This document shows positions 5,301 through 62,864 of a stretch of DNA of 64,000 bases, piece after piece; positions within the stretch are counted from its first letter, which is position 1; every line of letters begins with the position of its first letter. The stretch is from Asterias rubens (taxonomy: Eukaryota): contig NC_047062.1 in assembly GCF_902459465.1 (NCBI RefSeq), positions 11,160,001 to 11,224,000 on the forward strand. The letters are read 5' to 3'. The notes below the pieces were generated by a model. It searched no databases, was not told where the DNA came from, and saw only the letters and a list, made by a program, of their open reading frames with translations. Made by a program: the position numbers and the translations under genes.

Positions 5301-8300
5301 ATGCACTTTTATCGTGAACTGCGTGGTATATTCACAATAGGTTGAGTCAGAGTCCACATCTCTATAAAAAAGGGGGGGGGGGGAGAAAGGAAACACAAAA
5401 CCACAATCTCAATAAGAACGAAAACTTAAAATTAATGTGCTAATGTTATCACAAAGAACTTTGTCTTTGTCTGTCAACAAGGCCGCTTGGTTAAGACTAC
5501 TCTGGAGCTGATTTAATGAAACGCCAAGGATTACCCTATCTCGAGTTAGGACGAGTGACTAGTCCTAATAACTAGGATTAATCTAAAAGTTTACATGTTA
5601 CAGTGCAAAGCTGGGACTTGTCCTAAGTCCTAAGATTAATCCTAAGTTAGGAAGTGTTTGGTGAAATAGACAGCTGGTGTTTTTGACCACAAGTAGAGTG
5701 CGGGGTTCAAGTCCCAGTTGTGCCACTTGTGTCCTGGAGCAGGATATACTTCCCATTATTGCTTTGTCCTTCGGATGTGAAATTACATGTATTATTAAGC
5801 TGTAGCTCCTGTGTACTAGGATAGGCCATATGCATGTTAAAGTACCTAGGGGTGGATTTCACCTTGGACTATAGTCTTATCTCAAGTAAGAACGTTGGTT
5901 ACTCCTCATCCTATTTAGGACTAGCCTTAAGTTTTTGATAACTGAAGGTCCTAAGACTAGTCCTTGGCACTTTCTTTGTAAAATCGACCCCAGAACAATT
6001 ATCATGGAGAGTACCGGGTACATGTATAGGGGTTATAACACCGGTGTTTCTGGTTCACATAGCAAGCACTCTAGTTTTTAGCCACATCTAACTATGTGTG
6101 AAGTTTCAAGTACATACGAGTTTGGGAAAGGTGCCTTTTGTTAGGGGACAAGGGACGAAGAAGAAGTATCAATTAAAATTTAAAAAACTAACAAAAAAAA
6201 AGAGGTCTTCCGGGCTGTTGGCCCGAACACCTAAAAAGAAAGCACAACGTGGGATTCACCAGATCAAGGCATTATTTCTGAATATAAGTACCTGTTTGTT
6301 ACTTGGATGACGAAGTAGTACTCTGGTGGCCAGGGGAAGTTCATAGGAACACTGCCGCATGGCGATCCTTGCTCACAGTTCCAGAGAATCCCACTGTACT
6401 CATGAGTGAAGATCGGAACTGAACCATTACCGTGACTTCTTACATCGGCTGGTTTCCATATGATAGGTCCCGATCTGGGAAAGAGAGGAGGAACGGTGAA
6501 GCATGTTGGGGAAATTAGTAAGAAGTCGGAATAAGAAGAAGAAAAATAGTGTAGACCTCAATACTTAAAGGCACTGGATGGACACCTTTTAGTGATTGTC
6601 AAAGACCAGCATTCTCACTTGGTGTATCCCAACATATGCTTAAAATAACAAGTGAACATTTTGACTAAATCGGTCATTGAAGTTGCAAGACAATAATGAA
6701 AGGAAAAACACAGTTGTTGCACAAGTTACCAAATAAAATGCTGCAAGTCTGAATTCTTTTAATATTTGAGTGCGAAATTACTTCTTTCTTAAAAACTACG
6801 TTGCTTCAGAGGGAGCCGTTTGATTATTTTAACCCTATATAAATATAAATAAATTTATATAGTAATACTAACCTGTGAAAATTTCATTTCAAAACGTGGC
6901 TGCGTTTTTAAGATATCGTAAAAAATCGGAAGAATTAGGAAGAATTAATCATATTCAGTATTCAGAACATACACAATCTCAGAAAAATCAGAACCTGTCG
7001 ATTATGCTTCTTGGATTACAATTGGGGGAAATAAAAAAGGATATACTTTTCCATGAACACATTATACTTCAAAGTAAACAGGTTTTTCACAAAAATTAGT
7101 GGAAGAAAATAACATCAATCATTTTGCAATTCTCGAAACTATATGTAGCTACATGTATTTAAAGGGCGACTCCATGTGTCATTTCTTGATCTTGGTGCTA
7201 GCAGTTCTGTGTGAGATATTCTTCCCCACTAAGTTTATAGACTGATTTGTACTTGACACCCTTGGCTTTGAAGATAGAAACGTTGTGGGCTTTTAGTATG
7301 TAGGATTATAAACAAAACAAAAACGCTTCAAATAAAACTCAAAGTTAATTCCAAGTTAGTTAATGTTTACACGTAACAAATCAGTATCCAAAAGTACAAA
7401 ACAAACCAACTCTGCAAATAATTAAAGTGTTTTCATCACGCATACAGATGTAGTTCTTTTACAATATTTTGAGAGAATTGTTTTCATGATGTCAACCAGA
7501 ATTTACCAAAATGCTAAATGATAACTGCATAAAAACTAGTGTGCTTGTGTAGATCCCAGTTCATATCCCAGTGTTGGCTTTATCTGGTTGAGAAAACCAC
7601 AAGCAGGTGACACCTCGCTCAGTGGTGACCGCAAACAAGGCTTCCAGTACATAACGATCTGAGTGCTTGCGGCTAATCTTAAAGAATGTAAACATACAGC
7701 TCAGCTGTCAGTGAAGTGTCCCGGAATAATCCCGTTATGAATTTGAAAGCTATTGGACCGGGAGGAAAAACGTCCCCGGGTTAGAATATCCCTGTGTTTT
7801 CCTGGGGATAGTTGCCTAAATCGTATTCTGGACACTGTTTCACTCATTTCTCAAAAACTACAGCACCTCAGCAAGAAATATTTTAAGTGAATCTTTTTAC
7901 TCTCATTATCTTTAAACAGTGTAAGTTTAATGTGGACATTGTGTTTTGTGTTACAAAAAGTACCGAAATCCATCTACAGTTGAGTGTAGATTCGTAAAAA
8001 TAATCTACACTTTCATTAGTGGCGTCACAGAAATAGTTTGAAATATATGGATAATGGCTTACCCATTTTGTACATTATACTGAGCGATCTGTTGATTGTT
8101 GAAGTATTCTGCATTGGTTGGATTGTCCACACTACCACCAATCACAATCATTGAATACTGCCCAGTGAACAAACTGGATCTCCCTGTTGCTAGATCCAAC
8201 AGGCGGAAAACAGGACTAAACTCTGCAATGTGACAAACACAAGACAGATAAGTCACATTAATAAAAGGTATTAAAAAAAGCGCCTTTACAAAAAGATCAA

Positions 8301-11300
8301 AGCGCTGTACAAAATAAGACAAAATCATAATTTGAACCTTGAATTTAAAGCAGTAACTGACATGGGTTCAGTAATCATTATAGCAATGCTAGTTACAACG
8401 TAGCTACCTTTGTTGTAGTAATCAAGGTGCCAAAAGGGACCCCAAAACTGATGAACTTTTTTTTACTTTAAGGGTCGACTTATTTGTTGAAGTAGTTACA
8501 GCCAATAATATAAATGGCCTCGCTAAGCCAAAAGCCGGCACTTCATGCCAATACTAAAATCTGGCCAGATTAGTTCGTTTGATGAAAAGAAGAGCTTTCA
8601 AATAACCTAGTTAAGGCCTACAAGATTTGTCCATGTACACAACGTTTAAAGAGGAAGGGAAATGTTAAATTCATTTTTGTCATGAACTCATTTTCCAACT
8701 GATCAGTTGTCATTGTATTCAATACCCTTCCAGTGCAATATTTGTTGAAATCCAAAACATCCAACTTTTTCAGAGAGAGATTTAAAAAATGACATCATTG
8801 GATTTCAACAAATAATAACTAATGGTCTTCGTATTCCAAGGAGGAATTTTTTGACAGCCAACACTTCAAATTCTTTGCCGTTTTGATTTATTGAAATTCA
8901 TGAATGAACCAAAATACCCCTATGCAAAAGATTTTCTCAGAATTCTGCATGTACAATCAGGATTCCCCGCTTACATGCAAGCGCCAAATTTCTGCGCTAG
9001 CCTTGCAAGCGTAGAATGCTTGGTAACGTGGAGCATGCACGCGCAGAAGTCAAAGTTTGCCACTAACCTGTGAAATACGCTTGTTGTACGCAAAGAATTC
9101 CCTGTTTCCGTAAGCGCCAACTCTGTGCTTTCAGTATAATATAATTTGGAAATTGACAAATTTTGCACTGGAATGGTACTGAATACAAAAGCAAGTTGTA
9201 CCATTTTAATGTGAGGGTAGAGACTTTTCATTATTTCCCAACCCACATAAGAACTCTATTGGAAATGGAGTGCATCACAAAATTGAATTTTGCTCTTCCC
9301 TTGCTCTTTAAGACATCAAATCACACTGAACTCAAGCCTTGATGTGTCAGTTGTCTTCACTTTCATCGCCATTTCAATTTTTCCAAGACATTAGTGCCTG
9401 ACTGGTGCAAAGGGGCATCACTAATCTACCTTACCTTGCTTGTAATAGAAGCATGGATACTTGGGATCTGGTATCGGACAGTCATATATGCTCGCATACG
9501 ACGTCCGTAGTTGTTGGAATGTTCCATCAACGTCAAAGACTAGATGTCTACCAGAAGGGCAACCCAGTTGAACACTTAGACTTTTGGTTCCCTGTGGATA
9601 AAATTAAACCACAGCTCCTGAAATGTGCCAAATTGTTACCGCGTTAGAGCTTTCTCAAACTTTACTTGTATTACTTCCAGGGGTATATTCATTCATACCC
9701 AAAACAGAAACACATTACCACTGCAAACATCATATTTATCATGGACAATAGGACCTTCTTTTAAAAGCAGTGGACACTATTGGTAATTACTCAAAATAAT
9801 TACCAGCATAAAACCTTACTTGGTAACGAGTAATGGGGAGAGGTTGAAAGTATTAAACATTGTGAGAAACGACTCCCTCTGAAGTGACGTAGTTTTCGAG
9901 AAAGAAGTAATTTTCCACGAATTTGATTTCGGGACCTCAAGTTTAGAATTTGAGGTCTCGAAATCAACCATCTGAAGGCACACAACTTCGTGTGACAATG
10001 GTATTTTTTTATTTCATTCATACATGTATCTCGCAACTTTGACGACCAATTGAGCTCAAATTTTCACAGGTTTGTTATTTTATGCATATGTTTAGATACA
10101 CTAAGTGAGAAGACTGGTCTTTGAAAATTACCAATAGTGTCCACTGTCTTTAAAGGAGCCTTAAAAATTATCCAGCTCCAAAGCAAATTAAAACTATGGC
10201 GCACCCAAACCATGGTAAAATACCATGCGGTCAAAAATACGCGCACTTAGTCCTTAAACTTAGTGATAACAGTATGAATTATGAAGTGGTGCTTTTGGGA
10301 ACAGCGATGATTATGTGAAAATATAAAACCTTTGGATCTAAAGCTCTGGGACGCAGCCTGACTTGAGGACTTACAGCAAAAAAGAAAATATGATATTTGT
10401 TTGCATGCTGTTATAAAATTAAATAATAATACCAAAGCACAGGGGAAGATAATAAGTTTGGATATAGGGATAAATGCAAGGATAGATCTTTTACGTAAGG
10501 CGGTGCTTTGGGAAACAGTATCCTCAGATCTAAGGCTTTGGGACATGACACAACTCCAGGAATAACTGGCACAAGGGAAAACATAGTATCTTTCTTTTTA
10601 TCTTTTGCATGCTGTGGTAAAATAATAAAACCAGTTTATAAAGAGCACTTGCTTATCAAATCAGACTAAAGTAGGAGGAATATCTTGGCTGCTTTAATTA
10701 TTACACTATTTTTCTTTACATTTCATTTTGTACATTTCAATGATTTGGTAACAGGATTTGTGAGAGAGTTCTAATAGCTCTTGGGTTTGGGGTTTTGTTT
10801 CCTCATAAATTATACTGTGTTATTTTACCAATTACACAGTAAATCAGTCATGGTGTTTTCTGTAATTTCTCTTCAAGTTTTGTTATAGATTTGAAAGTAT
10901 TTTTGAGAAGCCTGTCACAGAAAGATATGTAAGTTTGATTTTGTTTGCTTAATGAAATACAATTTTCTTTTTTTCAAGCAACATTCACTTGTTGAGAAAT
11001 GGACATAAGTAAAGTGTACCCCAGTTTGTTTCCCTTGTGGTTTCATTACATTATTTATTAACTGATACATTGAACGCTTAAAGGCAGTGGACACTATTGG
11101 TAATTACCCAAAATATTTATTACCAATAGTGTCCACTGCCTTTAAAGATGCTATGTCGGATTTTTGGCCCCAAATTTTTTGAGTGAAGGGTATTTCAAAG
11201 AGTATCACCCGCTCTTATGAAAAAAGTTTGACTTTTGCTTTTAATGGTCAGGATCCATGGCAAAAATTTAAAACGTTTCTTATAAAACACATATAAGAAT

Positions 11301-14300
11301 TGGTCACGTGATATATTGTTGGGATCCCGACAAAAACTAATTTTGAGCACTTTATTTCACTGCTACTACTAATTGGCGGACTTTTTCGAGCAATGGCTCA
11401 AATGAAAGCTTGTAACTTTCTCGACCCCCATCAAAATACCTATTGAATTTTAAATCAAAACTGTTGGGTCAAATCGGCCAAAAATCTGACATAGCAACTT
11501 TAAAACTAAACTTGTGTAGTGTAATTCAAAAACCATGCATCTTCCTTTGTTTCTTTGGCTTATTCAGGTATTACAATATTCACTTTTCGTTTTAATATTC
11601 AAATTGCAGTGTAATTAAAAAGCACAGAAAAAATATATTTACATTGTTTCAGGTCCAAAGTACACATTCCTAATTTTACAAAATTGTTCATGTAAAGTAA
11701 AAACATGATTTTGTTAGGAAGCAATTTCTAAATGAAGCAATTTTGTAGTTAGCAATAACAGGCAAGATATTTTGTCTTTGTAAAAAAAAAAACCAGCAAC
11801 ATTTTATCAAGTACAGGCTGTGCCCTACTACACACAGGCCTTGAACGTAGCCCTTGTCATTTTCCTCTTGTAAGGGGCATCTCTATGAGGACAATGTTAA
11901 TTTGTACAGGAACCTTGCAGAGGGCACCACAGCAAAAGCACAGGGCACCACAGCAAAAGCACAGGGCACCACAGAAATTGCTGCATGGGTGACGCAGGTG
12001 ATTTCAAGGCATGTATACAAACAATTTAACCACACTTTTTTTTATTTTTCCCAATGGCAAAAGAAAAGAAATCAAAAATCAAACCTTTGTAGGAAAAATT
12101 ATCGAGCCTGAATAGCATTGTACATTACCTGTAACTGATTGCCGCTATAAACATCATGAGTGAAACAGTTCAAGGGAGAGTTCCATACATTGAATGTAAC
12201 TGACACTGGTCTTAAACCAACACCAGGCACTGACTGGCTACCCAGGTTTCCTCTATCCGCCACATCCACCTCGAAGAATAAACAAACAAATAATATTTGA
12301 ATATTTTGTTAGATTCATAAAATTCAAGTTTAATCTAAAATAAGTAGTGTTGTCATCAAATGCCTGCATGATCCATAGCTGTTTGATAATAGTGTCATGG
12401 CCGGAGCAGTTAAGCTACTAACAGACTCAGACAATATATATTTGGTTTGCGGTAACACCATGTGTGCACTCTTGCAAGGTAGAGTTTGTTCTTAGAGAAC
12501 TGTCTTGCTTTATTCTACTACCGCGGAGCAGATTGTTCGGGTGTTCGGGAGACTTCTCAGTTCTGAAAAGAACTGCCCTGCTGTTTAACTATTACCTGGG
12601 CGGATGGTATAGAAATAGGCTGGGACTACTACCCTAGCTTAAAGGATCGTAATTAACAGTACTACAGCGGAGTCAGTTCTTGAACTGGTCTCAACGTTTC
12701 GACTACCTTGCTCTAGTCATCATCAGGAGACTGAAGAAGTAAGAGAGAAGTGGGCTTATTTATAGGGGTTCACTTCATGGTGTTACCACAAACCAAATAT
12801 TTTGATACCTCACCATGAGATGCCTCAAATCCTATAGACTCAGACAAGCTCCCAAGTTTTTGATCAGCAGGTAATGTCAGTTCTAGTCCCGGTTGTGGGT
12901 CTTGGGCAAGATGATTTGTCATTATTTGTCTTGATGTTTTTGGAATAGGACATCAAGCTTTGGGTTGTACGTAAAGAAAAAAAACAAGAACACTTCCGCT
13001 GGTTTTTCTTGGTCACATTGCAAACATCCTTGTTTACAGGTTTCCTCAGGCTTGCTAGCTACAATGATTTAGTTATGAGGCATCCTTGATTTTACAACCA
13101 GAAATATAAAACAAAACTGTACTGTTTACATTCAATAATATCAAAGGGCCAGATTGTGTATATCTACTTAGGGGCGAAAAGTTTCCTCTGGGGAAAAAGG
13201 TCCATCTATACCCATGGAGGAAATTCCGTAAAAAAAAATCATTATGTGTTGTTTTCTTGAAGAAAAAAAAACTCTTAATTTTTTGCAATTTTTTTAGTTT
13301 TGCTTTCAGGTAAGTGTTAATTGCATAATACAAGAGAGAATGTAGGCGTGTGAGTGTGGTCAAATAAATACCAATAAAATGTGCACAATGCATGTTTGGA
13401 TTTGCATTACTGTATTCAATCCCATTTGTTCTCTCTTCTTCAGTTCATTCAACATATGCTCAAAAACCAAGCTTTTAAATTTCATGTTAGCAAAAAAAAG
13501 AATTATGGACCAAAGTTTTTTTTTTTGGCTAATCATCTGACACACAAAGGCATGAAGGTGTTGGCTCCAATTAACTTTCTTTTTTTTTTTTTAGTGGGGG
13601 GGGGGGGATAGTATTTTTCTGAAGTCCATTGTTACCTGATACTTCACGGAATTGTTGAGATGAAATACCTCCCTGTTGGTGGATACTTGGAGGAGATTGT
13701 TATCGGACACAAGCACTGAAAGCCGCAGGTCATCTAGAGACGATGTGCCTGAAAAGTGATGAAGCAAGAAAGTCAAAACTTTGTAAAGTGGAGAAAATCA
13801 TCAGAACAAACTTTAGGAAAAAAATGGAAAATATTGCTTTAATGAGTTGTTGCTTAAAGGCAGTGGACACTATTGGTAATTACTCAAAATTAATTTTTAG
13901 CATAAAAACTTACTTGGTAACAAGCATGGAGAGCCGTTTATAGTATAAAACATTTTGAGAAACAGCTCCCTCTGAAGTAACGTAGTTTTATCTGTTTTCA
14001 AGAAAGAAGTAATTTTTCACGATTTTGATTTCGAGACCTCAGAATTAGATTTTGAGGTCTCGAAATCAAGCATCTGAAAGCACACAACTTCGTGTGACAA
14101 GGGTGTTTTTTATTTCATTCATATCTTGCAACTCCGACGACCAATCAAGCTCAAATTTTCACAGGTTTGTTATTTTGAGCTTATGTTGAGATACACCAAG
14201 TGAGAAGACTGCGGGTCTTTGACAATTACCAATAGTGTCCACTAGGCCTGGGCGAACTATTTGAATACCCGGTTAATGGCGAATAGGTTTTCCTATCCGT

Positions 14301-17300
14301 AACCGCGATTGCCTTTTTTTTCTTAACCGGATATCCGCATAGGGCGCGAATAGCTATTTATAAACCGGATAGTTCTGTAATTACAACCAAGTAACCGGAT
14401 ATTCTTTAATATCGGAATATCCGCGGACGTCGGGCGACAACTGATATGAATGTTTTGTCTGAATCCTTATGAAACTTTATTAAGACAGCATAAAACAGCA
14501 TAAATTAAGTATTTAACTATGCTCACCTCCGTGAAGAGTTAAAACAATGACATTTCTGACGTAATTTGTTCAAAGATTACAAAAGTTTTCCTTCACGTAG
14601 AGTCAATCACGATCAAAAGAATTAGCAAATCGCCATCTTTAAATTAGATCCGGTCATTTTTATGAATGAACCGAGTGACACTGTCTAAAACTAATATCAA
14701 TCCGCCCATAAGATCTCATTCACAAACGAACAGCGCCCTCTGGCGGCAAATGTTTTAAAAAAATTTTGGTAATAGCGCCCACAAGCGGCGAAAAAACTAT
14801 TCGAATATCCGGTTAATTTCGGATAGTTGGCCAGCGGTATCCGAATAACAAAATTTCACTATTCGCCCAGCACTAGTGTCCACTGTCTTTAACTTGTGGC
14901 TATTGTGAAAACAAATACAGGCCCAACTCCATAGATCTAATTAATCACAACAAAATTGTACACATTTTTACTTAACAGTTTAAGGCTGTCAGCCAAAATG
15001 GATATCTGTGACTGGTATCATGATTAGTTTGGCTAAGCAGAAAATTAAGTTAAGCATATTATTTTAAGCAGCTCTTAGAATTTGGGCACTTATGTATAAT
15101 CTTGATTAAAAATGGTGTTGGCCAAAAGGTAATCAGACTAGTTGATTGTAAAAAGTTGTCGGTAGTGCATTCTGCTCTACCAGTCAGGCTCCTAGTGGAT
15201 GATACCCATACCTATGTCCTTACGGACTGTGAAGGGGTAATCTTGTTTCAGCCCCAGGAGTAGGTGGCAATGGCCCCTCGTTGAAGTTAATTTGAATCAA
15301 TAGCCCAAGTGTAGCTTTCACCTTGATGTGGTCGTCTGGCCTTGTGATGTTAGGCGATCTCTCATAAACAAAAACATTTTAAAATAAGTTTTTAAAAAAC
15401 CTACTGTTTCCTTGATTAATTGTAGCGGTGAGGTATACTGCGAACCTAAAGATCTCACAATGATCCAGAAAGATTTCCTCCGGCATCACAGAAGTTGCCT
15501 CAACATCAATGTCATCATTTAACTGCAATATTAACAATTACAGCCATTTTACTACAGTTAATTTGATACCTTATACTCAAGGTTTGTATGTTCAAGAAAA
15601 TGAACTCATACTTCTGATCATGTCTAAGAGTGTAAGAAAAACAATTAAAAAAATTGTTTAGAGGCATCAGAAGAGTCTTTCTCAAAAGCTGAAGCCTTCT
15701 AAAATTTTTGGCAACTAACTACTAGTAAAAATTCTTGAATAATTGGACAACAATATCTTCTTTTTGAGATGAAGCTTACTGAACAAATAGAATGTTACAT
15801 TTCAGAGGTTTACTGAGCTTTAACATCACCATTTACGCATTTTAAAAAATCAAATTAATTATCAATTGAGCAAGTCAAGTCAAGTCACAAGTAATTTTTT
15901 CTCAAGTCAGGTCAAGTCACAAGTAATTTTTGTCACCAAGTAATGCCAAGTCACAAGTAAAGTTTGTTCCACCAAGCCAAGTCATGGTCACAAGTCGATT
16001 TTTTTTACCAAGTCAAGTCAAGTAGCAAGTCATTTTCCCTCAAGTCAGTTCAAGTCAATTTCTCCCAAGTTAAGTCAAGTAACAAGTCGATGAAATTGGC
16101 GGCTTGAGTCTGACTAGAGTCCAAGTCATCAGTGACTCAAATCAACAACAAGTCAATGAGGTCAATAAATACAACTCCTTATACAAGGTGAGTCAAAACG
16201 AAGTTGACCAACATTTATGATTTAAAAACAAAACAACTGACACTCAAAACAGTGATATTAACCATGCATTCTTTCCTGATCATTTCATGCCTGTTTTACT
16301 GAAAGCACTCAAGTTTTCTGTCCATGGAATGTTAATGCTTGACTGATTCTAATCTGTCCATGGAATGTTAATGCTTGACTGATTGTAATCTGTCCATTGA
16401 ATGTTAATGCTTGACTGATTCTAATCTGTCCATGGAATGTTAATGCTTGACTGATTCTAATCTGTTCATGGAATATTAATGCTTGACTGATTCTAATCTG
16501 TCCATGGAATGTTAATGCTTGACTGATTCTAATCTGTCCATGGAATGTTAATGCTTGACTGATTCTAATCTGTCCATGGAATGTTAATGCTTGACTGATT
16601 CTAATCTGTCCATGGAATGTTATTGCTTGACTGATTCTAATCTGTCCATGGAATGTTAATGCTTGACTGATTCTAATCTGTCCATGGAATGTTAATGCTT
16701 GACTGATTCTAATCTGTCCATGGAATGTTAATGCTTGACTGATTCTAATCTGTCCATGGAATGTTAATGCTTGACTGATTCTAATCTGTCCATGGAATGT
16801 TAATGCTTGACTGATTCTAATATGTCCATGGAATGTTAATGCTTGACTGATTCTAATCTGTCCATGGAATGTTAATGCTTGACTGATTCTAATCTGTCCA
16901 TGGAATGTTAATGATTGTATCAAGTATTCCGTGGAAAGCTTGCAAAATGAGTAACTTGATTAAAATAGACATAACTCCTCTTAAAAATGATCAATTTCTT
17001 TCATTCGTTTGTAAGCAGGAGAGAGTACTTGTTAAAAAAAGGATAAACATCCATATACATGTACTATACATAACACACTCCAAAATTGAAAATTCAAACA
17101 AAAGATGGCAAGTAAAAGCAATACACAAATGATATATACAAAAACCATGGTAAAATTAAAACTGAATTGCCCCTAATTGTCAAATTAGGAAGGGTATGCC
17201 AGTACCTTAAGATATTCCAATGGGGATATAGCTATTTGAGACTCTAGTAGATGGTTCCTGAAGATGTAGTCATTGTAGGGCATCAGTGGAAGTTTACTCT

Positions 17301-26300: not shown

Positions 26301-29300
26301 CAGACCTGACTGGACGCGAGCAGCGAAGACTTTTTGTTTGTCGTCAGATTTTGCTAGAGCTAGTATGTACACTTCAGCCGTTCTGCTCTGAGTAGGGGCC
26401 ATCATCCATTCATAGCATCGAGCTGGAGTGTTCCTTAGCATCCCCGCAGGCATGGTCGTATCTTGGTACTGTCCGAACGCCTCGTACAAACCGCTGATCG
26501 TACTAAAGAGAATCCGGTCTGGAAGGGTTAAGACATGCTTGATGAGGGGACCACCAACCGGAAGGCTGGTGCATAAATTATCATCCTCATCTGGTAAAGA
26601 AATCTGTAAGAGGAAAATATTGTGTGTTATCGGATTTCTCATTGAATCGATGAATACAGAGTTACAGATAATTTTTCATTCAAGCACAAATTGGCAAAAT
26701 GATTGAAAATTTGTTGTATAAAAACAGTAAAAAACAAGTATACAATACTCCAAACCTTTTGGATAAGTAATGTACATGTAAGAGTCAATATAAACTATTG
26801 TGTTTAAGCGCAAAGCTGCCAACATTCGCATCTTGCAATCAGGAAGATATTTAGAATTACATTCAACAAAGAGGTCACACAATCAGGGAGATTGGTAAAT
26901 TTATTCATCAGAACATGGAAAGATTTGTTTATTTTCGGGGGAAAATCTGCAGAATATGGGAGTTGGCAGCTCTACAAGAACAACTAAAAATTTTACAGAG
27001 GTTTATTACACAGGGAGAAAAACAAATAATTTTTTAATTGTGTGCTCAATTCCAACATAAATATAAACAGTAAAATTGACTTCTACATTGAGCTCAAGTT
27101 CGTTTAACCTGAATGAAAATAGTATTTAATTAAAATACAATACCTCCCTTAGTGATTATAAAACTTGTTTTGAGTTTTACATGGTGGAAAAAGATGCATT
27201 TGTTTTGGAAAGTTTGCATGTTTTTATTATATCTCACAATTGGTATGACTGTTTTTTAACTATTGTTTATGTAAGTTTTCACTGCTTTGATGAAAGAAAA
27301 AAAGCAGAAAACAAAATGCAATTGTTGCTGAAAGGGCAAACCCCTTCTCCGCACCCCCTCTTAAAAGAACCCAAGTCATTTACCTGGAGAGCCTCAAACG
27401 ACGTCAAGTCATCATTACTGAGAATCACAGCTGACGAGTCAGGGATCCCAGCACCAAAGACATTTGTAGGTGTACTACTGGCGATTGGACCAACTTGGTA
27501 GGGCCTTCCAGCCAGCAGCTTCCTGGAGATGTTCTCCATGGGTACCTTTGTACCTAAGACACTTGTTGAGTCTTGGCTGCCGTTGGGATGTACCTCATGG
27601 AAACCATCCAAGCTGATAGTATGCCTATGAGAATTGTTATTGTCAACCACAGTCAGTATTATTATTTGAAATCAAACCAGACCTCAACATAATCCACGGC
27701 ACCCACAGCAATTGTCAATTGTGCCCTGCGCTTTTACTGTGGTGCCCTTTGCGAAGTTCCAATACAAATTTATATTTTTCTCATACAAATGCCCCTCACC
27801 AGCTGCGCCCATTCAGGAGTGAAATTCAAGGCTTGCTTAAAAGCAGTCGTGAGATTGTACGGAAATGAAAATGTTAAATAGATGTTCTCTTGGGTTGGAA
27901 TTACAGAATTTTTAGTGGTTTTCCGACTCTCTGTGACAACATATTAGCCTCTCTCCATCATGAAAATCTGAAGACACAGGGACATCAGTGGAAAATCCTG
28001 ATAAATTATGTGAAAAATAAAGGGGAGTTTTCCAGATTGTGTTTTTAAAATGCATTTGTCTTTATTACAATGCAACACGTCTTTACTATGCTTTGACTAC
28101 AGCCATATGTTTCTACGATTTTTATTCGCAATTCCTGTAAAAAAGGTCGAGCATTACTCATATTTGATACAGCGAACTGCTAGGGTTAATCAGAAATGAA
28201 AAACCAACATGTTGCTTTGTGGTAAAATGAAATTGTACTGTTTATATGGGGTTTGAGGCATTCCCATTTGAAGTACTGTCTATTTAACTTTAAATATAGT
28301 TTTAAAACTTGAACAGAATTTGTTTGTATTGTATTTAAATTGAGTGCAAAGAAGCATGTTTCATAGATGGAACACTATGTTAACTATATGATCATCAATG
28401 AAGAACGTATTACCTTTTTGGCTCAACATCATAGCCTGTGCTTCCAGTCCTCACACAGATTGGTATCGATCTAGTGTGGCTGTTAAATAACAGAGGCACT
28501 AGCCAGGCTGGATTGCTCAAGACAGCCGGCTGATTGCTATCATTGGTGCTAACTAGAGCGCCACGCAAGGTGTATTCTAAAACATTTGAGCAACTTTCTT
28601 CAAACGACTGCTCGGAGTAAGTCAAAGTTACTGTGGGATTTATACCCGATGCTGCTACCGTTCTGCCAACGCTAGGTGATGGATAACCATTGCAGTATAC
28701 TTGGAGATATAACAAATATGGATATGACAAATAGTCCTGCATGGGGAGTAGACAAACAAAGGCAAAGATGACATCGAAAACATTCAACAAATAATATTTT
28801 AAAGAAATCCATGTATTTTGTTTATATATTGTTATATAAAATGAGTCTTTGGGTAAAATGTATATAAATATTTGCTTCCAATTATTTAAAAAAAAATTTT
28901 TGTAGACTTTTGTGTAGGCAAGCCCCTTAAAAGTGAAAACTTGTATTCACGTCGTCAGTTTTGTTTTCTTTTTCAAATCTTAGAAATCAATTCGTGAAAA
29001 TAATCAGTGTTTCAAACGTAAGGCCTATTGTTTTTGACAGCTACATAAGTGTGGCTAATTTTAGCTTTCCCATACTTTTTAAATTTGATTCTTTACTTAG
29101 TAATGGGGGGGGGGGAGAAGCTGCTATTTCTACTATAATTATTATAAGTTTGAAGTTCTGAAATTGTATCCATAATCAAACAACCATTTATAATATTTAT
29201 TCTGACATGGTTTGGGGTCTTTTGGGCTATCTTAGTTATTATTCATAAATACCTCAGACAGTTTCGCTATTCCTATTGGTGGAGAGCGCGTCACGTGGTG

Positions 29301-60265: not shown

Positions 60266-60550
60266 GACGATGACTAGAGAAAGCTAGTCGAATTGACGTG
60301 CTTGCTCTATAGTCATCGTCAATGACGATGACTAGAGAAAGCTAGTCGAATTGACGTGCTTGCTCTATAGTCATCGTCAATGACGATGACTAGAGAAAGC
60401 TAGTCGAATTGACGTGCTTGCTCTATAGTCATCGTCAATGACGATGACTAGAGAAAGCTAGTCGAATTGACGTGCTTGCTCTATAGTCATCGTCAATGAC
60501 GATGACTAGAGCAAGCTAGTCGAAACGTTGAGACGATGACTAGAGCAATC
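60266..60550. repeat. 58-bp tandem array, 4 full plus partial units, each an imperfect palindrome
   Basis: Unit gacgatgactagagaaagctagtcgaattgacgtgcttgctctatagtcatcgtcaat starts at 60266, 60324, 60382, 60440 and 60498. Confidence 0.95.
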
Positions 60551-60780
60551 AGTACAGTTGATTACGATCCTATAAGCTAAAGTAGTAGTCCAGTCTAATT
60601 TCTATACCATCCGCCCTGGTAATAGTTAAAAGCAGGACAGTTCTTTTCAGAACTGAGAAGTCTCCCGAACCTCCGATTATCTACTCCACGGCAGTAGAAT
60701 AAAGCAAGACAGTTCCCCAGAACAACTCTACCTGGCAAGTAGATACACACATGGTGTTACCGCAAACCAAATATACATTG
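60496..60780 (+). mobile_element. Second copy of the hammerhead-bearing element (degenerate core at 60496-60534)
   Basis: Reverse-complement similarity to ~12435-12720; core ATGACGA-T-GACTAG-AGCAAG-CTAGTC-GAAACGTT-GAGAC. Confidence 0.75.
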
Positions 60781-62864
60781 TACATGTGTACATACGCTGC
60801 TGTACACGTATTTAGTATTATCATGGAGGAAGGAAGAGAAGGAGCTCGAACGAAGGGACTTCAAAAGTCGAACCCGTGGTACCGCGGTTGTTGAACGACA
60901 CCTCGTAATCCCCCACATACCTTATACAGACAATGGGCGACCTATGGATATAATACAGAAAAACAACTTTTTTGAGACCTGAGTCAATCCCGAGTCAAGC
61001 TACGCTTACGTTCCAAGATCTGCAGCTACGCTTACGTTTCAAAATACATTCTCACAAAGACGCTTTTGAATCCCTCAAGATTTCCTTCCCCCAAGATTAA
61101 AAAAATTTCACTGTGAATAACACTACAGGGCCCACCAGTTAATATCTGTTTAGTAGAATACTGTACAAAATTTCTTTACTATCCAAACATTTAGTTGGGC
61201 ACTAGGCATAAGTCTACAACATTTCAAATTTAATTAAAAATTGGCTGGTAACCAGTTTCTGCTAAGCAATACTATTTTGTGCTAACTATAAGCAAATTGT
61301 TTAGCCAGTACAGGCTTCATCAGTGTGGGCCCTGGCACGTCGGGAGCAAAACGCCACGATCGCATTTCAAGCTGCATCTTGGAACGTAACCACATCATAT
61401 TTTTTGGAATGTAGTCGTAACAATATCTTTTGGAACAACTCATGAGAAATAGCGAATTTTGATTGCTTGTCGGTTGGCGACTATACTGCTATTCAACTCC
61501 CAGTTATTTGAGGCAAATAGTCAGGTCATAAATTCCACTAGTTGCCCAGTTTAATCATTACCTCAAAAATAACTCTTCATTCACAGAATTAAAAAATAAT
61601 ACTTTGTTTGGCAAAATTATGCTTTGAGGGAATTTTGTTTTAGCATTATTTTTATTTCAACCTTTTATACAAAATTCTCATAATATTTTTAAGCTACTCA
61701 CACAATAACACTGTCAATATAACCATGGAGGTAGATGCGATATTCCTACGTTTTGACATCATCAAAATTACTTGAAAACTCATAACAAAAAGAAATTAGG
61801 GGGCCATGAATCAAAATTGGCATATTGGAACGTTGCTATCATAAGAAACAACGGAGTCGACACCCGCAAGCTGGGAGTTCATAGCGCCCGGGATTTAACA
61901 CCTCCAACCCCCATCCACGAGACACGGCATGGGCGGTACGTGATATTCCACAAGGCTTATTTCACGTTCCGATTGCTCCACGCCGTGGGGCCATACAAGC
62001 GTCCGTTACACGGACTCTCTGAATGCTAATCTTACGTTCGATTTTTGACCATTATTTACGATTTCAAATCGTCACGTATCCATAATCTGAATAGGTAGTC
62101 TATACTTAAAATTTCACTGTTTTCCTTTTAATAGGCCTATAATGACCACGGAATTACTCTTTGAGCAAAGATTATTAAAAATAGAGCGCCGATCATATTG
62201 AACTTTGACTCGGTCTAGTTTGAATAGTCATCTTCAATTCGTCACGTGATATGAATATTGCATACATTAAAAGTAATTTACATAGTCTGGCCACGCCTTC
62301 AATTTGCAAATGTCCCAGACCATGGTGAGCACAGGACATGGTGAGATCCGGAAATCAGAGAAACAGAGCGCCCGCTAGCGTTCGTTCATTACAAGCGTGT
62401 ACAGTTTTTGCCGCGCATAATCGGAACGTTGGTTGTGTGTGACCACGCAACACCAATGGTCTTGGAACCTAGACTAAGACGAGCCGTCCAGCTGGAGGTC
62501 TCCTATCTTTTTCCACTGGTCAGACAGGGGCATTGAGAGTATACATGTATTCTTTTGTTACTCTGCGGTTTTGCGGGTTCTCTTCCTTCCTCCGTGGTAT
62601 TATGCACTGTGTGTTATGGAGTGGGGGGGGGGGGGGGGGGCGCTGGCGGATTTCCGTCATGGGGACTGGAATTTTGCAGGTCGCGTCTGGCTGGAGCGCC
62701 TTGATCTAGGCTATACAAAACATTGTGGATTAATTAATTTGTGTGTGTTTTTGTGATCGCGGAATTCCCTGCTTTCCGCAAGCGCCGCTTGTTTTCTTAC
62801 GCGGTAAGCAGAGCCGTGAAATTGGGCCCCAATGGTTTAGGCGTTGTTCAGCTTTTTATAGCTC

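What the first reader, a model, noticed from the sequence alone, without database searches (positions are those of the whole stretch)
12423..12847. Minimal hammerhead ribozyme on the sense strand of a CATSPERG intron, inside a Penelope-like insertion within a SINE
Seen: the minus strand 12731->12688 reads GUCUC CUGAUGA U GACUA gagcaagg UAGUC GAAA CG UU GAGAC. That is stem I (5 bp), an intact core with one extra nucleotide after A9, stem II, a palindromic AACGUU helix III and a GUU cleavage site. The ~400-bp host has inverted termini and 8-12-bp flanking direct repeats, and it splits a tRNA-SINE head between its A and B boxes. Established: minimal type-I hammerheads with palindromic helix III occur in Penelope-like elements and cleave mainly as dimers, and an extra base between A9 and G10.1 is tolerated in a natural viroid hammerhead. 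Inference: a small non-autonomous ribozyme-bearing retroelement family; this copy is transcribed within CATSPERG pre-mRNA (intron 15) and could cut it.
Basis: partly seen in the sequence, partly recalled or inferred. Interest (0 to 1): 0.8.

Follow-up and report, generated by a model that had tools for sequence, protein, structure and literature searches.

The report
Truncated Penelope element with minimal hammerhead
A 401-bp fragment of a Penelope-like retrotransposon lies in an intron of a sperm-channel (CATSPERG-like) gene and carries the small hammerhead-ribozyme motif these elements are known to carry by the thousand, so it is an ordinary repeat copy, not a special regulator of the gene.

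Summary
The motif is real. The minus strand 12731->12688 reads stem I, CUGAUGA, one extra U, stem II, GAAA, ACGU, U17, stem I. It lies in a 401-bp insertion (12435-12835) flanked by a perfect 12-bp target duplication.

The insertion is a 5'-truncated, head-to-head copy of an autonomous EN+ Penelope-like element (PLE). Full-length copies elsewhere carry RT, GIY-YIG, 301-bp pseudo-LTRs and an optional 35-nt tail. The hammerhead matches every hallmark of the minimal PLE hammerheads of Cervera & de la Pena 2014, including the extra base after A9. About 1750 copies exist in this 418-Mb genome. Two sister PLE families carry the homologous motif, and helix II covaries between the families.

The gene call (CATSPERG-like, minus strand, sense orientation) holds. 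"Intron 15" could not be checked. The "tRNA-SINE" host is not supported.

Cutting of the host pre-mRNA is unlikely:
- it is the only sense-strand copy found in the gene;
- the motif is a dimer- or protein-dependent ribozyme with low reported activity;
- no RNA read ends pile up at the site.

Two extras emerged. Most copies start exactly at the ribozyme's first base, downstream of a TATA box. A small excess of copies in all three families starts exactly at the predicted scissile bond. First-reader notes record similar items elsewhere in this genome.

The parts
12423..12434 (.). Target-site duplication, left copy (AGACTCAGACAA on +)
   Evidence: Perfect 12/12 direct repeat with 12836-12847
12836..12847 (.). 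Target-site duplication, right copy
12435..12835 (-). Whole PLE insertion (401 bp): inverted arm plus main 5'-truncated copy
   Evidence: Bounded by the TSD. 89-92% identical to genomic copies. 6.3% diverged from the column majority of 29 copies
12776..12835 (+). Inverted 5'-truncated arm: the last ~60 nt of the element including the 35-nt 'tail', read on the opposite strand
   Evidence: Matches positions 437-499 of the family 3' end in reverse orientation at 90%. RNA reads join 12432/12435 to 12802/12805 on opposite strands, as expected from tail-bearing copies
12435..12772 (-). Main copy: last 41 nt upstream of the pLTR plus the pLTR, ending at the 'short' (tail-less) 3' end ...AAACCAAATATATA
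   Evidence: Aligns to family reference positions 127-467. Short and long 3' ends seen in alignment
12757..12764 (-). TATAAATA box, 32 nt upstream of the Inr-like A
   Evidence: Coordinates. Conserved in copies that extend upstream. Promoter role is inferred
12729..12734 (-). Inr-like TCAGTC at the 5' edge of the pLTR and ribozyme
   Evidence: 38/60 sampled copies and the 5' pLTR of the full-length copy start within -6..+12 of this point
12688..12731 (-). Minimal type-I hammerhead. Helix I 12731-12727 / 12692-12688. Core CUGAUGA 12726-12720. Extra U 12719. Helix II 12718-12714 / 12705-12701. GAAA-CG-UU 12700-12693
   Evidence: Differs from the family majority at 2/44 positions: N7 C>U, and a loop-proximal helix II C>G
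12692..12693 (-). Predicted scissile bond (after U17 = 12693, before G1.1 = 12692)
   Evidence: Follows from hammerhead numbering. No pile-up of read ends here (table 6)
12509..12514 (-). AATAAA within the pLTR, sense to the host gene
   Evidence: Function not tested
12435..12462 (-). 3'-terminal AC-rich region (CATGGTGTTACCGCAAACCAAATATATA), conserved between PLE families. Probable reverse-transcription start region
   Evidence: 75-79% conserved in otherwise unalignable sister families. Role inferred from PMC11167929
8059..8328 (-). Host exon ORF with CATSPERG_C match
   Evidence: Pfam PF22846 E 2.2e-5
28410..28790 (-). Host exon ORF with CATSPERG_NTD match
   Evidence: Pfam PF22840 E 2.8e-9, above cut-off

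Best explanation
Window 12435-12835 is one old insertion (about 6% diverged) of an endonuclease-positive Penelope-like retrotransposon. It has the typical PLE product shape. A short inverted 5'-truncated arm carries the 35-nt tail. It is joined head-to-head to a 5'-truncated main copy that ends at the tail-less site. A 12-bp target duplication flanks the whole.

The main copy is essentially the element's pseudo-LTR. The pLTR begins with the family's minimal type-I hammerhead.

In the family, a TATA/Inr-type promoter at the end of the ORF region appears to start transcription at the first base of the ribozyme (inferred). The resulting RNAs are either pLTR-only or pLTR-ORF-pLTR. The element's RT copies them from an internal AC-rich 3' site, which explains the two alternative 3' ends.

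The hammerhead can form its helix III only between two copies, or with help from the element's protein. It probably cuts a minority of transcripts after U17. A small excess of genomic copies in three related families begins exactly at G1.1 (shown as counts; cleavage itself is inferred).

The intronic copy studied here still has an intact motif. It is the only copy found on the gene's sense strand, and most likely does nothing to the host transcript.
For: PLE identity.
- A full-length copy (L031) has 301-bp direct repeats at 98% identity.
- Its ORF pieces carry a DKG motif, RVT_1 (E 1e-15), YVDD, and GVYRIPCTCGKVYIGETGR...EH.
- A sister copy has RVT_1 and GIY-YIG (PF01541, E 5.9e-5, above cut-off) in one open 510-aa frame. 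It is 55% identical to the Fam1 C-terminus across that domain.
- The nearest Atlas clusters are GIY-YIG/RT proteins.

PLE insertion signature.
- Copies end at a short or a long (+35 nt) 3' end.
- In about 14 of 14 scorable head-to-head insertions the tail is on one arm only.
- Both features are described for PLEs (PMC8557442, PMC11167929).

Hammerhead.
- All core bases are present.
- It meets the four published min-HHR hallmarks (PMC4209133): an unpaired base between 9 and 10.1, G10.1-C11.1, palindromic 15.2-16.2, and a short helix I with a long helix II.
- There are 1754 genomic copies against 0 for the control.
- Homologous motifs in two sister families show two covarying helix II pairs: C-G/G.U/U-A and U-A/C-G. 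In those, 89% of cells are paired, against 27-47% when partners are slid.

5' ends.
- 38/60 copies start at the ribozyme's first base.
- 5/60 start at the scissile bond (p = 0.014).
- Genome-wide counts at the cleavage window against flanking windows are 9 vs 1 and 1 (Fam1), 31 vs 4 and 11 (Fam2), and 10 vs about 2 (Fam3).

Expression and host gene.
- The family is transcribed: about 600-850x at >=85% likeness in four RNA runs.
- Host gene and strand.
Against: - No Rfam hammerhead model scores the motif.
- The monomer has no unusual stability.
- No read ends accumulate at the predicted cleavage site in four RNA-seq runs. The libraries behave as unstranded, so transcript strand is unknown.
- The most abundant sister family has A instead of U at core position 4 in 97 of 100 exact copies. 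It still proliferated and still shows copies starting at G1.1. Either cleavage is dispensable or the 5'-end excess has another cause.
- The window counts are small, and some rows are indel variants rather than true break points.
- Published min-HHRs cleave poorly in vitro. A PLE hammerhead was not needed for insertion in vitro (PMC4209133, PMC11167929).
- The promoter is read from motifs and 5'-end positions only.
Confidence: 0.85

Rival explanations
1. One reading: the ~400-bp unit is a member of a small non-autonomous, ribozyme-bearing retroelement family (retrozyme- or SINE-like) that depends on a PLE in trans.
For: - 38 of 60 sampled copies are ORF-less units running from the ribozyme's first base to the 3' end.
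- RT-bearing copies are far rarer than pLTR copies: 475 first-look candidates for all PLE families, against 4408 for this pLTR.
- A 2026 preprint argues that animal retrozymes derive from PLE pLTRs (10.64898/2026.07.22.740005).
Against: - The pLTR sequence is the same as that of autonomous copies, at 97-98%.
- The window copy includes 41 nt upstream of the unit start plus an inverted arm. It is therefore a truncation product of a longer RNA, not a unit-length element.
- There is no tandem array at this locus, and no back-joined (circular) reads appear among the listed joints.
Confidence: 0.2
2. The hammerhead-like motif is conserved as an RNA structure, for example a protein-binding or folding element of the pLTR. 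It does not self-cleave in vivo, and the resemblance to an active ribozyme is vestigial.
For: - Sister family Fam2 keeps helix II, GAAA and ACGU, but has CAGAAGA (A4) and only 3 bp of helix I. It is the most abundant family.
- Activity in vitro is low, and insertion in vitro does not need the hammerhead (PMC4209133, PMC11167929).
- No read ends pile up at the site.
- Naiad PLEs thrive without hammerheads (PMC8557442).
Against: - Fam1 and Fam3 keep every core base in their majority sequence.
- Copies starting exactly at G1.1 are several-fold over neighbouring windows in all three families.
- The PAc hammerhead does cleave when its protein is present (PMC11167929).
Confidence: 0.3
3. This intronic sense copy cleaves CATSPERG pre-mRNA and affects expression of the gene.
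For: - The motif is intact (2/44 changes, neither in the core) and sense to the gene.
- It also brings a TATA box and an AATAAA in sense orientation.
Against: - The only other family copy in the 64-kb window is on the opposite strand, at 60497-60780, outside the gene span mapped by the two Pfam hits. No partner for helix III was found in the same transcript.
- Monomeric min-HHRs show no detectable cleavage (PMC4209133).
- Unique flanks have about 0-30x depth and the host exon 1-4x, so nothing could be measured.
- From general knowledge, only fast ribozymes in introns disturb mRNA production.
Confidence: 0.03
4. The element is a MITE (a non-autonomous DNA transposon), because it has inverted termini and a target duplication.
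For: 25-nt inverted arms at 96% and a 12-bp TSD.
Against: - Most copies have no inverted arm at all.
- Arm length varies from copy to copy (63 to more than 230 nt), and the arm is simply the element's own 3' end.
- Longer copies run into an RT/GIY-YIG ORF.
Confidence: 0.01

Closest known systems
Minimal hammerheads (min-HHR) in pLTRs of metazoan Penelope-like elements (Cervera & de la Pena 2014, PMC4209133)
   Same: - Type I topology with no helix III loop and palindromic 15.2-16.2.
- One unpaired base between A9 and G10.1, and a G10.1-C11.1 pair.
- Helix I of 4-5 bp and a long helix II.
- Located in the pLTR.
- Thousands of mostly solitary copies from truncated PLEs, some as close pairs on opposite strands.
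   Different: - This is a previously unlisted family in this genome. The paper's main text names no echinoderm.
- The ribozyme's first base coincides with the pLTR and apparent transcript start.
- A sister family here has A at core position 4.
Poseidon PLE of Anolis carolinensis, PAc (Frangieh et al. 2024, PMC11167929)
   Same: - RT plus C-terminal GIY-YIG.
- A 30-40-nt optional tail explained by two internal RT start sites in an AC-rich stem-loop.
- Both DNA strands used, giving inverted arms.
- A hammerhead in the pLTR, with no RNA-seq ends at the cleavage site.
   Different: - In PAc the hammerhead overlaps the ORF start. Here it lies at the 5' edge of the pLTR, about 360 nt before the ORF.
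- The genomic copies here show a small excess of 5' ends at the scissile bond.
Metazoan non-LTR retrozymes (Cervera & de la Pena 2020, PMC7229834; Li et al. 2026 preprint 10.64898/2026.07.22.740005)
   Same: Short ORF-less hammerhead-bearing repeats, related to PLE pLTRs and mobilised in trans.
   Different: Retrozymes are tandem arrays with canonical type-I hammerheads and abundant circular RNAs. This locus is a single dispersed copy with a min-HHR, and no circular joints were seen.
CChMVd (+) hammerhead with an extra base between A9 and G10.1 (De la Pena & Flores 2001, as cited in PMC4209133)
   Same: An extra unpaired nucleotide at the same core position is compatible with activity.
   Different: That is a viroid type-III hammerhead with full helices. 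It shares only this one feature and is not related by descent.

Membership tests
Hammerhead ribozyme, minimal PLE type (min-HHR) | Conserved core C3 U4 G5 A6 N7 G8 A9 / G12 A13 A14 / A15.1-U16.1 / H17 | tested here: met
   Read directly at 12726-12693(-). The family majority has CUGACGA, the window copy CUGAUGA
Hammerhead ribozyme, minimal PLE type (min-HHR) | One unpaired nucleotide between A9 and G10.1, and a G10.1-C11.1 pair | tested here: met
   U in Fam1, C in Fam2 and Fam3. The G-C pair is invariant in 7/7 aligned sequences. Listed as a hallmark in PMC4209133
Hammerhead ribozyme, minimal PLE type (min-HHR) | No helix III loop; palindromic 15.1-16.1 stretch able to pair between two copies | tested here: met
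   ACGU is invariant in all three families
Hammerhead ribozyme, minimal PLE type (min-HHR) | Helices supported by compensatory changes | tested here: met
   Helix II: 2 of 6 pairs change on both sides across three families, with 95% of cells paired. Helix I: no covariation, 77% paired. Only three lineages, so support is modest
Hammerhead ribozyme, minimal PLE type (min-HHR) | Match to a curated hammerhead covariance model (Rfam) | tested here: not met
   No hammerhead family at E<=10. Probably because the motif has no helix III hairpin (inference)
Hammerhead ribozyme, minimal PLE type (min-HHR) | Self-cleavage after position 17 | tested here: inconclusive
   Indirect only. There is an excess of genomic copies starting at G1.1, but no read-end pile-up in RNA-seq. 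Needs a bench assay
Penelope-like element, EN+ (C-terminal GIY-YIG) | Reverse transcriptase domain | tested here: met
   RVT_1 E 1.1e-15 in L031:1467-2156(-) and E 2.4e-10 in L043
Penelope-like element, EN+ (C-terminal GIY-YIG) | GIY-YIG endonuclease C-terminal to RT in the same ORF | tested here: met
   PF01541 E 5.9e-5 (23.7 bits, cut-off 22.6) in the open 510-aa ORF of sister copy L043. The Fam1 ORF aligns at 55% identity across it. The Fam1 ORF alone gives no Pfam hit
Penelope-like element, EN+ (C-terminal GIY-YIG) | Pseudo-LTRs, inverted 5'-truncated arm, 30-40-nt tail at one end | tested here: met
   301-bp direct repeats. Inverted arms in many copies, with a 35-nt tail on one arm only
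Penelope-like element, EN+ (C-terminal GIY-YIG) | RT groups with PLE/telomerase RTs in a phylogeny | not tested
   No tree built. The DKG motif upstream of RT was seen by eye
Non-LTR retrozyme | Tandem arrays of hammerhead units giving circular RNAs | tested here: not met
   Single dispersed copy. No back-joints within 12435-12835 among the listed joints; 1637 joints were not shown
MITE / DNA transposon | Fixed terminal inverted repeats at both ends of all copies | tested here: not met
   Most copies lack the second arm, and arm length varies
tRNA-derived SINE (the flanking host sequence) | tRNA-like head recognisable by a tRNA finder, and many genomic copies | tested here: not met
   ARAGORN finds nothing in the rebuilt empty site, even at relaxed threshold. 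The flanks and a 31-nt B-box-like string are unique in the genome
CATSPERG (host gene) | CATSPERG domains in collinear order on one strand around the insertion | tested here: met
   CATSPERG_NTD at 28410-28790(-) E 2.8e-9. CATSPERG_C at 8059-8328(-) E 2.2e-5, just under cut-off. The beta-propeller model found nothing here

The most novel reading that the evidence does not exclude
In this animal, PLE transcripts begin at the first base of the minimal hammerhead. The ribozyme removes the capped 39-nt leader (38 nt in this window's copy) from a minority of them in vivo, and the shortened RNAs are still reverse-transcribed. This would leave a genomic 'fossil record' of min-HHR cleavage: copies that begin exactly at G1.1 in three PLE families. 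RNA-seq has so far failed to show this for any PLE. The family with A at core position 4 shows the same record, which would imply either an unexpectedly tolerant core or rare canonical source elements.
Probability: 0.4. Interest if true: 0.5.

Novelty: new member of a known kind. Interest (0 to 1): 0.3.

Why it matters
For the host gene it almost certainly does not matter. This is one of about 1750 decaying copies of a common repeat.

For annotation, such loci should be masked as PLE fragments. They are not MITEs or novel ribozyme genes, and Rfam will not flag them.

For PLE biology, this genome offers a compact natural comparison. It holds three related families whose hammerheads are canonical (two families) or altered at U4 (one family). 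All three have clear transcript-start and tail signatures. A full census of 5' ends could test whether min-HHRs really cleave in vivo, which the published work leaves open.

Tried and rejected
- Rfam scans of 3.5 kb and of a 101-nt slice gave no hammerhead hit. Only chance SECIS- and snoRNA-like rows appeared.
- A simple CTGATGA...GAAA pattern is not rarer than chance in the window (3 found, 2.4 expected). The motif's significance rests on the family, not on the pattern.
- A genome search with Pfam PF15064 (CATSPERG beta-propeller) found nothing in the window. The gene was identified from ORF scans instead.
- The SINE host was checked four ways and found no support.
- My strict hammerhead descriptor found only Fam1 in 30 PLE loci. 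A relaxed regex mostly hit coding sequence read backwards. The sister-family motifs were found only through weak DNA homology.
- Comparing match counts of the HHR window (1754) with a downstream window (1375) showed no step-up after the cleavage site. The comparison is confounded by CpG decay and subfamily variation.
- RNA reads: the libraries behave as unstranded, the host gene is barely expressed, and no end pile-ups appear. They cannot settle cleavage or host effects.
- Pfam and PDB sequence searches of the Fam1 C-terminal ORF alone gave nothing.
- The Fam3 downstream control is largely indel variants of the element itself (13 of 15 rows). Only about 2 rows count as break points.
Full report
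1. What is in the sequence

In hammerhead numbering the parts are:
- helix I, 5 bp;
- the C3-A9 box;
- one extra U;
- helix II, 5 bp, beginning with G10.1-C11.1;
- G12 A13 A14;
- A15.1-C-G-U16.1, a palindrome with no loop;
- U17;
- the 3' strand of helix I.

The predicted cut lies between 12693 and 12692.

Three tests of the single sequence give no support for a ribozyme:
- A perfect-core pattern alone is no rarer than chance in 64 kb.
- The isolated RNA is no more stable than shuffles.
- No Rfam hammerhead model matches, even at E<=10.

The case has to rest on context and relatives.

2. The host element

A perfect 12-nt direct repeat (12423-12434 and 12836-12847) brackets a 401-bp insert. The insert belongs to a large family. 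The first look found 4408 candidates in the 417.6-Mb assembly, and the best copies are 86-93% identical.

Alignment of 30 copies with flanks shows two pieces in the window's insert:
- About 60 nt at 12776-12835 is the reverse complement of the family's 3' end, including a 35-nt terminal extension.
- 12435-12772 is a copy that starts 41 nt upstream of the ribozyme and stops at the family's alternative, shorter 3' end.

Other copies extend further 5'. One pair shares 1.9 kb at 97%.

I fetched 10 kb around one of these copies. It is an element of about 3.6 kb with 301-bp direct repeats at 98% identity. Its ORF pieces are interrupted by frame breaks. They carry:
- a DKG motif;
- an RVT_1 domain (E 1e-15);
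- YVDD;
- a C-terminal GVYRIPCTCGKVYIGETGR...EH stretch.

Pfam does not score that stretch in this copy. A sister-family copy has RVT_1 and GIY-YIG (PF01541, above cut-off) in one open 510-aa frame, and the two proteins are 55% identical across the domain. The protein-atlas neighbours are GIY-YIG/RT clusters.

Together these features are the published signature of Penelope-like elements (PMC8557442; PMC11167929):
- pseudo-LTRs;
- an adjacent inverted 5'-truncated copy;
- a 30-40-nt tail present at only one end.

In my 60-copy sample, every head-to-head insertion in which both 3' ends could be read (about 14) had the tail on exactly one arm. The window's copy has the commonest arrangement: tail on the inverted arm, none on the main copy.

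The MITE reading is excluded. Most copies have no second arm, and arm length varies from copy to copy.

3. The hammerhead in the family and its relatives

The family majority reads GUCUC CUGACGA U GACUAG AGCAAG CUAGUC GAAACGUU GAGAC. The window copy differs at two positions. One is N7 (C to U, the one free core position). The other is the loop-proximal pair of helix II.

The core-to-helix-III string occurs 1754 times at <=3 mismatches, against 0 for the reversed control.

Every feature that Cervera & de la Pena (PMC4209133) list as emergent hallmarks of PLE minimal hammerheads is present:
- the unpaired base between 9 and 10.1;
- G10.1-C11.1;
- palindromic 15.2-16.2;
- helix I of 4-5 bp with a long helix II;
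- location in the pLTR.

A protein search of the genome found further PLE families at 46-66% amino-acid identity. Weak DNA homology led to their versions of the motif at the same position:
- Fam3 has UUCUC CUGAAGA C GAGCAG AGUAUA CUGUUC GAAACGUC GAGAC. CUG occupies the first three core positions in 88 of the 100 exact copies listed.
- Fam2 has UUCUC CAGAAGA C GAUCAG AGCAUA CUGAUC GAAACGUC GAGUU. A occupies core position 4 in 97 of 100 exact copies.

The Fam2 pattern matched 2932 times and the Fam3 pattern 2159 times at <=3 mismatches. These two counts overlap, because the strings differ by only three bases.

Across the three families the comparison gives:
- Two helix II pairs change on both sides: C-G / G.U / U-A, and U-A / C-G.
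- 89% of cells are paired, against 27-47% when partners are slid by 1-3 columns.
- The bulge position is kept but its base changes.
- H17 is U or C.
- GAAA and ACGU never vary.

This is good comparative support for the fold, from only three lineages. Fam2's A4 and 3-bp helix I show that a very successful family does not keep a canonical core.

4. How it probably works

In copies that extend upstream, a CCAAT box and a TATAAATA box precede the ribozyme. The TATA box lies 32 nt before the A of an Inr-like TCAGTC that overlaps the first ribozyme bases.

To look at 5' ends without bias toward long copies, I took the first 60 usable genomic places that exactly match a 34-nt anchor 15 nt downstream of the ribozyme. 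I mapped where homology to a long reference stops:
- 38 of 60 stop within -6..+12 of the ribozyme's first base, with the mode at -2..0.
- 6 run further upstream.
- 16 stop between +13 and +54.

The 5' pLTR of the full-length copy starts at the same place. A head-to-head pair is joined there as well.

The simplest reading is inferred. Transcription starts at the ribozyme, giving pLTR-only RNAs and, from tandem or pLTR-flanked copies, full-length RNAs. RT starts at an internal site near the 3' end. That region (CATGGTGTTACCGCAAAC...) is the only non-coding stretch conserved between the families. It fits the AC-rich stem-loop start sites, and the origin of the tail, shown for an Anolis PLE (PMC11167929).

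Of the 16 copies truncated between +13 and +54, five stop at +36..+39. The sequences show they begin at or within 3 nt of G1.1, the base after the predicted cut. The binomial p is 0.014 for a 4-nt window chosen beforehand.

I then counted, genome-wide and with exact anchors, copies whose homology breaks in a 3-nt window. The three windows were the cut site, 4 nt upstream of it, and 4 nt downstream.

| Family | Cut-site window | Upstream window | Downstream window |
|---|---|---|---|
| Fam1 | 9 | 1 | 1 |
| Fam2 | 31 | 4 | 11 |
| Fam3 | 10 | not counted | about 2 genuine break points of 15 rows |

Caveats on these counts:
- The numbers are small.
- Some rows are indel variants or duplicates. Examples are GTTG four times in Fam2 and one duplicated pair in Fam1.
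- The upstream anchors contain more CpG.
- A copy that begins at G1.1 has lost its core, so for Fam2 one cannot tell whether its source had A4 or the rare U4.

With those limits, the excess at the exact scissile bond in three families is the first hint I know of that these minimal hammerheads cut in vivo. It remains an inference.

RNA-seq does not help. Four raw-read runs of the species cover the family at about 600-850x (at >=85% likeness), but equally on both strands, and no place in the element collects read ends. The Anolis study reported the same absence.

ORFs on the minus strand at 28410-28790 and 8059-8328 match CATSPERG_NTD (E 2.8e-9) and CATSPERG_C (E 2.2e-5). The insertion therefore lies inside a minus-strand CATSPERG-like gene, between coding exons, with the ribozyme in sense. 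The intron number cannot be verified without a gene model.

Cleavage of the pre-mRNA is unlikely:
- Helix III needs a second copy, and none was found on the gene's sense strand. The only other family copy in the window is on the other strand, 48 kb away, outside the span between the two Pfam-matched exons.
- Monomeric min-HHRs show no detectable cleavage, and dimers little (PMC4209133).
- The Anolis hammerhead needs its own protein (PMC11167929).

The runs available express the host exon at only 1-4x, so no direct test was possible.

The copy also brings a TATA box and an AATAAA in sense orientation. No read-through from it is visible: 2-3x in the downstream flank.

6. The flanks

- ARAGORN finds nothing in the rebuilt empty site.
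- Each flank, and a 31-nt string around the B-box-like AGTTCTAGTCC, is unique in the genome.
- By eye the T-arm/acceptor part resembles a tRNA, so an ancient, decayed tRNA-derived sequence cannot be excluded.

7. Verdict

The object is a routine, decaying member of a kind described in 2014 and known to occur by the thousand per genome.

First-reader notes s1-172736 and s1-180013 record similar items elsewhere in this genome. I did not check them.

The parts worth keeping are family-level:
- transcripts that seem to start at the ribozyme;
- the one-arm tail rule;
- a sister family with A4;
- a small excess of copies beginning at the scissile bond.

Noticed in passing
L046:1199-1257(-), L043:2563-2621(+), L063:2294-2352(+) and about 2900 genomic matches: A sister PLE family (Fam2) has the homologous hammerhead-like motif, but with CAGAAGA (A at core position 4) in 97 of 100 exact copies and only 3 bp of helix I. 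It is the most abundant of the three families.
   Followed up: partly
60 sampled Fam1 copies L068-L127; genome-wide pattern counts: Copies that begin exactly at the base after the predicted hammerhead cut are several-fold more frequent than copies breaking in neighbouring 3-nt windows. This holds in all three PLE families: 9 vs 1/1, 31 vs 4/11, 10 vs about 2.
   Followed up: partly
window 60266-60785 (+): A second Fam1 copy, 5'-truncated inside the ribozyme core. It is preceded by four 58-nt tandem units, each made of a helix II fragment and its reverse complement.
   Followed up: no
L045, L046, L052, L059, L060, L063 3' ends; window 12435-12462(-): The 3'-terminal CATGGTGTTACCGCAAAC... region plus tail is 75-79% conserved between PLE families whose other non-coding sequence does not align. 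It is probably the shared reverse-transcription start site.
   Followed up: partly
L023 (G000:C18:2731173-2731807), L094, L017 2722-2875: Some copies carry tandem arrays of a 77-nt unit from the pLTR 3' part, or of an 85-91-nt internal unit.
   Followed up: no
window 9762-10153: A ~390-bp MITE-like element with ~25-nt terminal inverted repeats (AAAGCAGTGGACACTATTGGTAAT...). RNA reads at >=85% likeness reach 22,000-42,000x in all four runs. A related perfect hairpin at 11066-11157 scores as 'mir-633' on both strands.
   Followed up: no
window 12925-13121: RNA reads at 10-30x in one run all differ from the window at several fixed positions (13010, 13012, 13070, 13095/6, and 12839/40). They may come from another allele or an unseen paralogue of the flank.
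   Followed up: no
window 16309-16923 (-): A 36-nt minisatellite that reads as a 204-aa ORF of ALTFHGQIRISQ repeats.
   Followed up: no
window 14022-14072: A near-perfect 49-nt palindrome that scores as 'mir-3036' on both strands. The same CGAGACCTCA...TGAGGTCTCG core occurs inside the MITE at 9930-9965.
   Followed up: no
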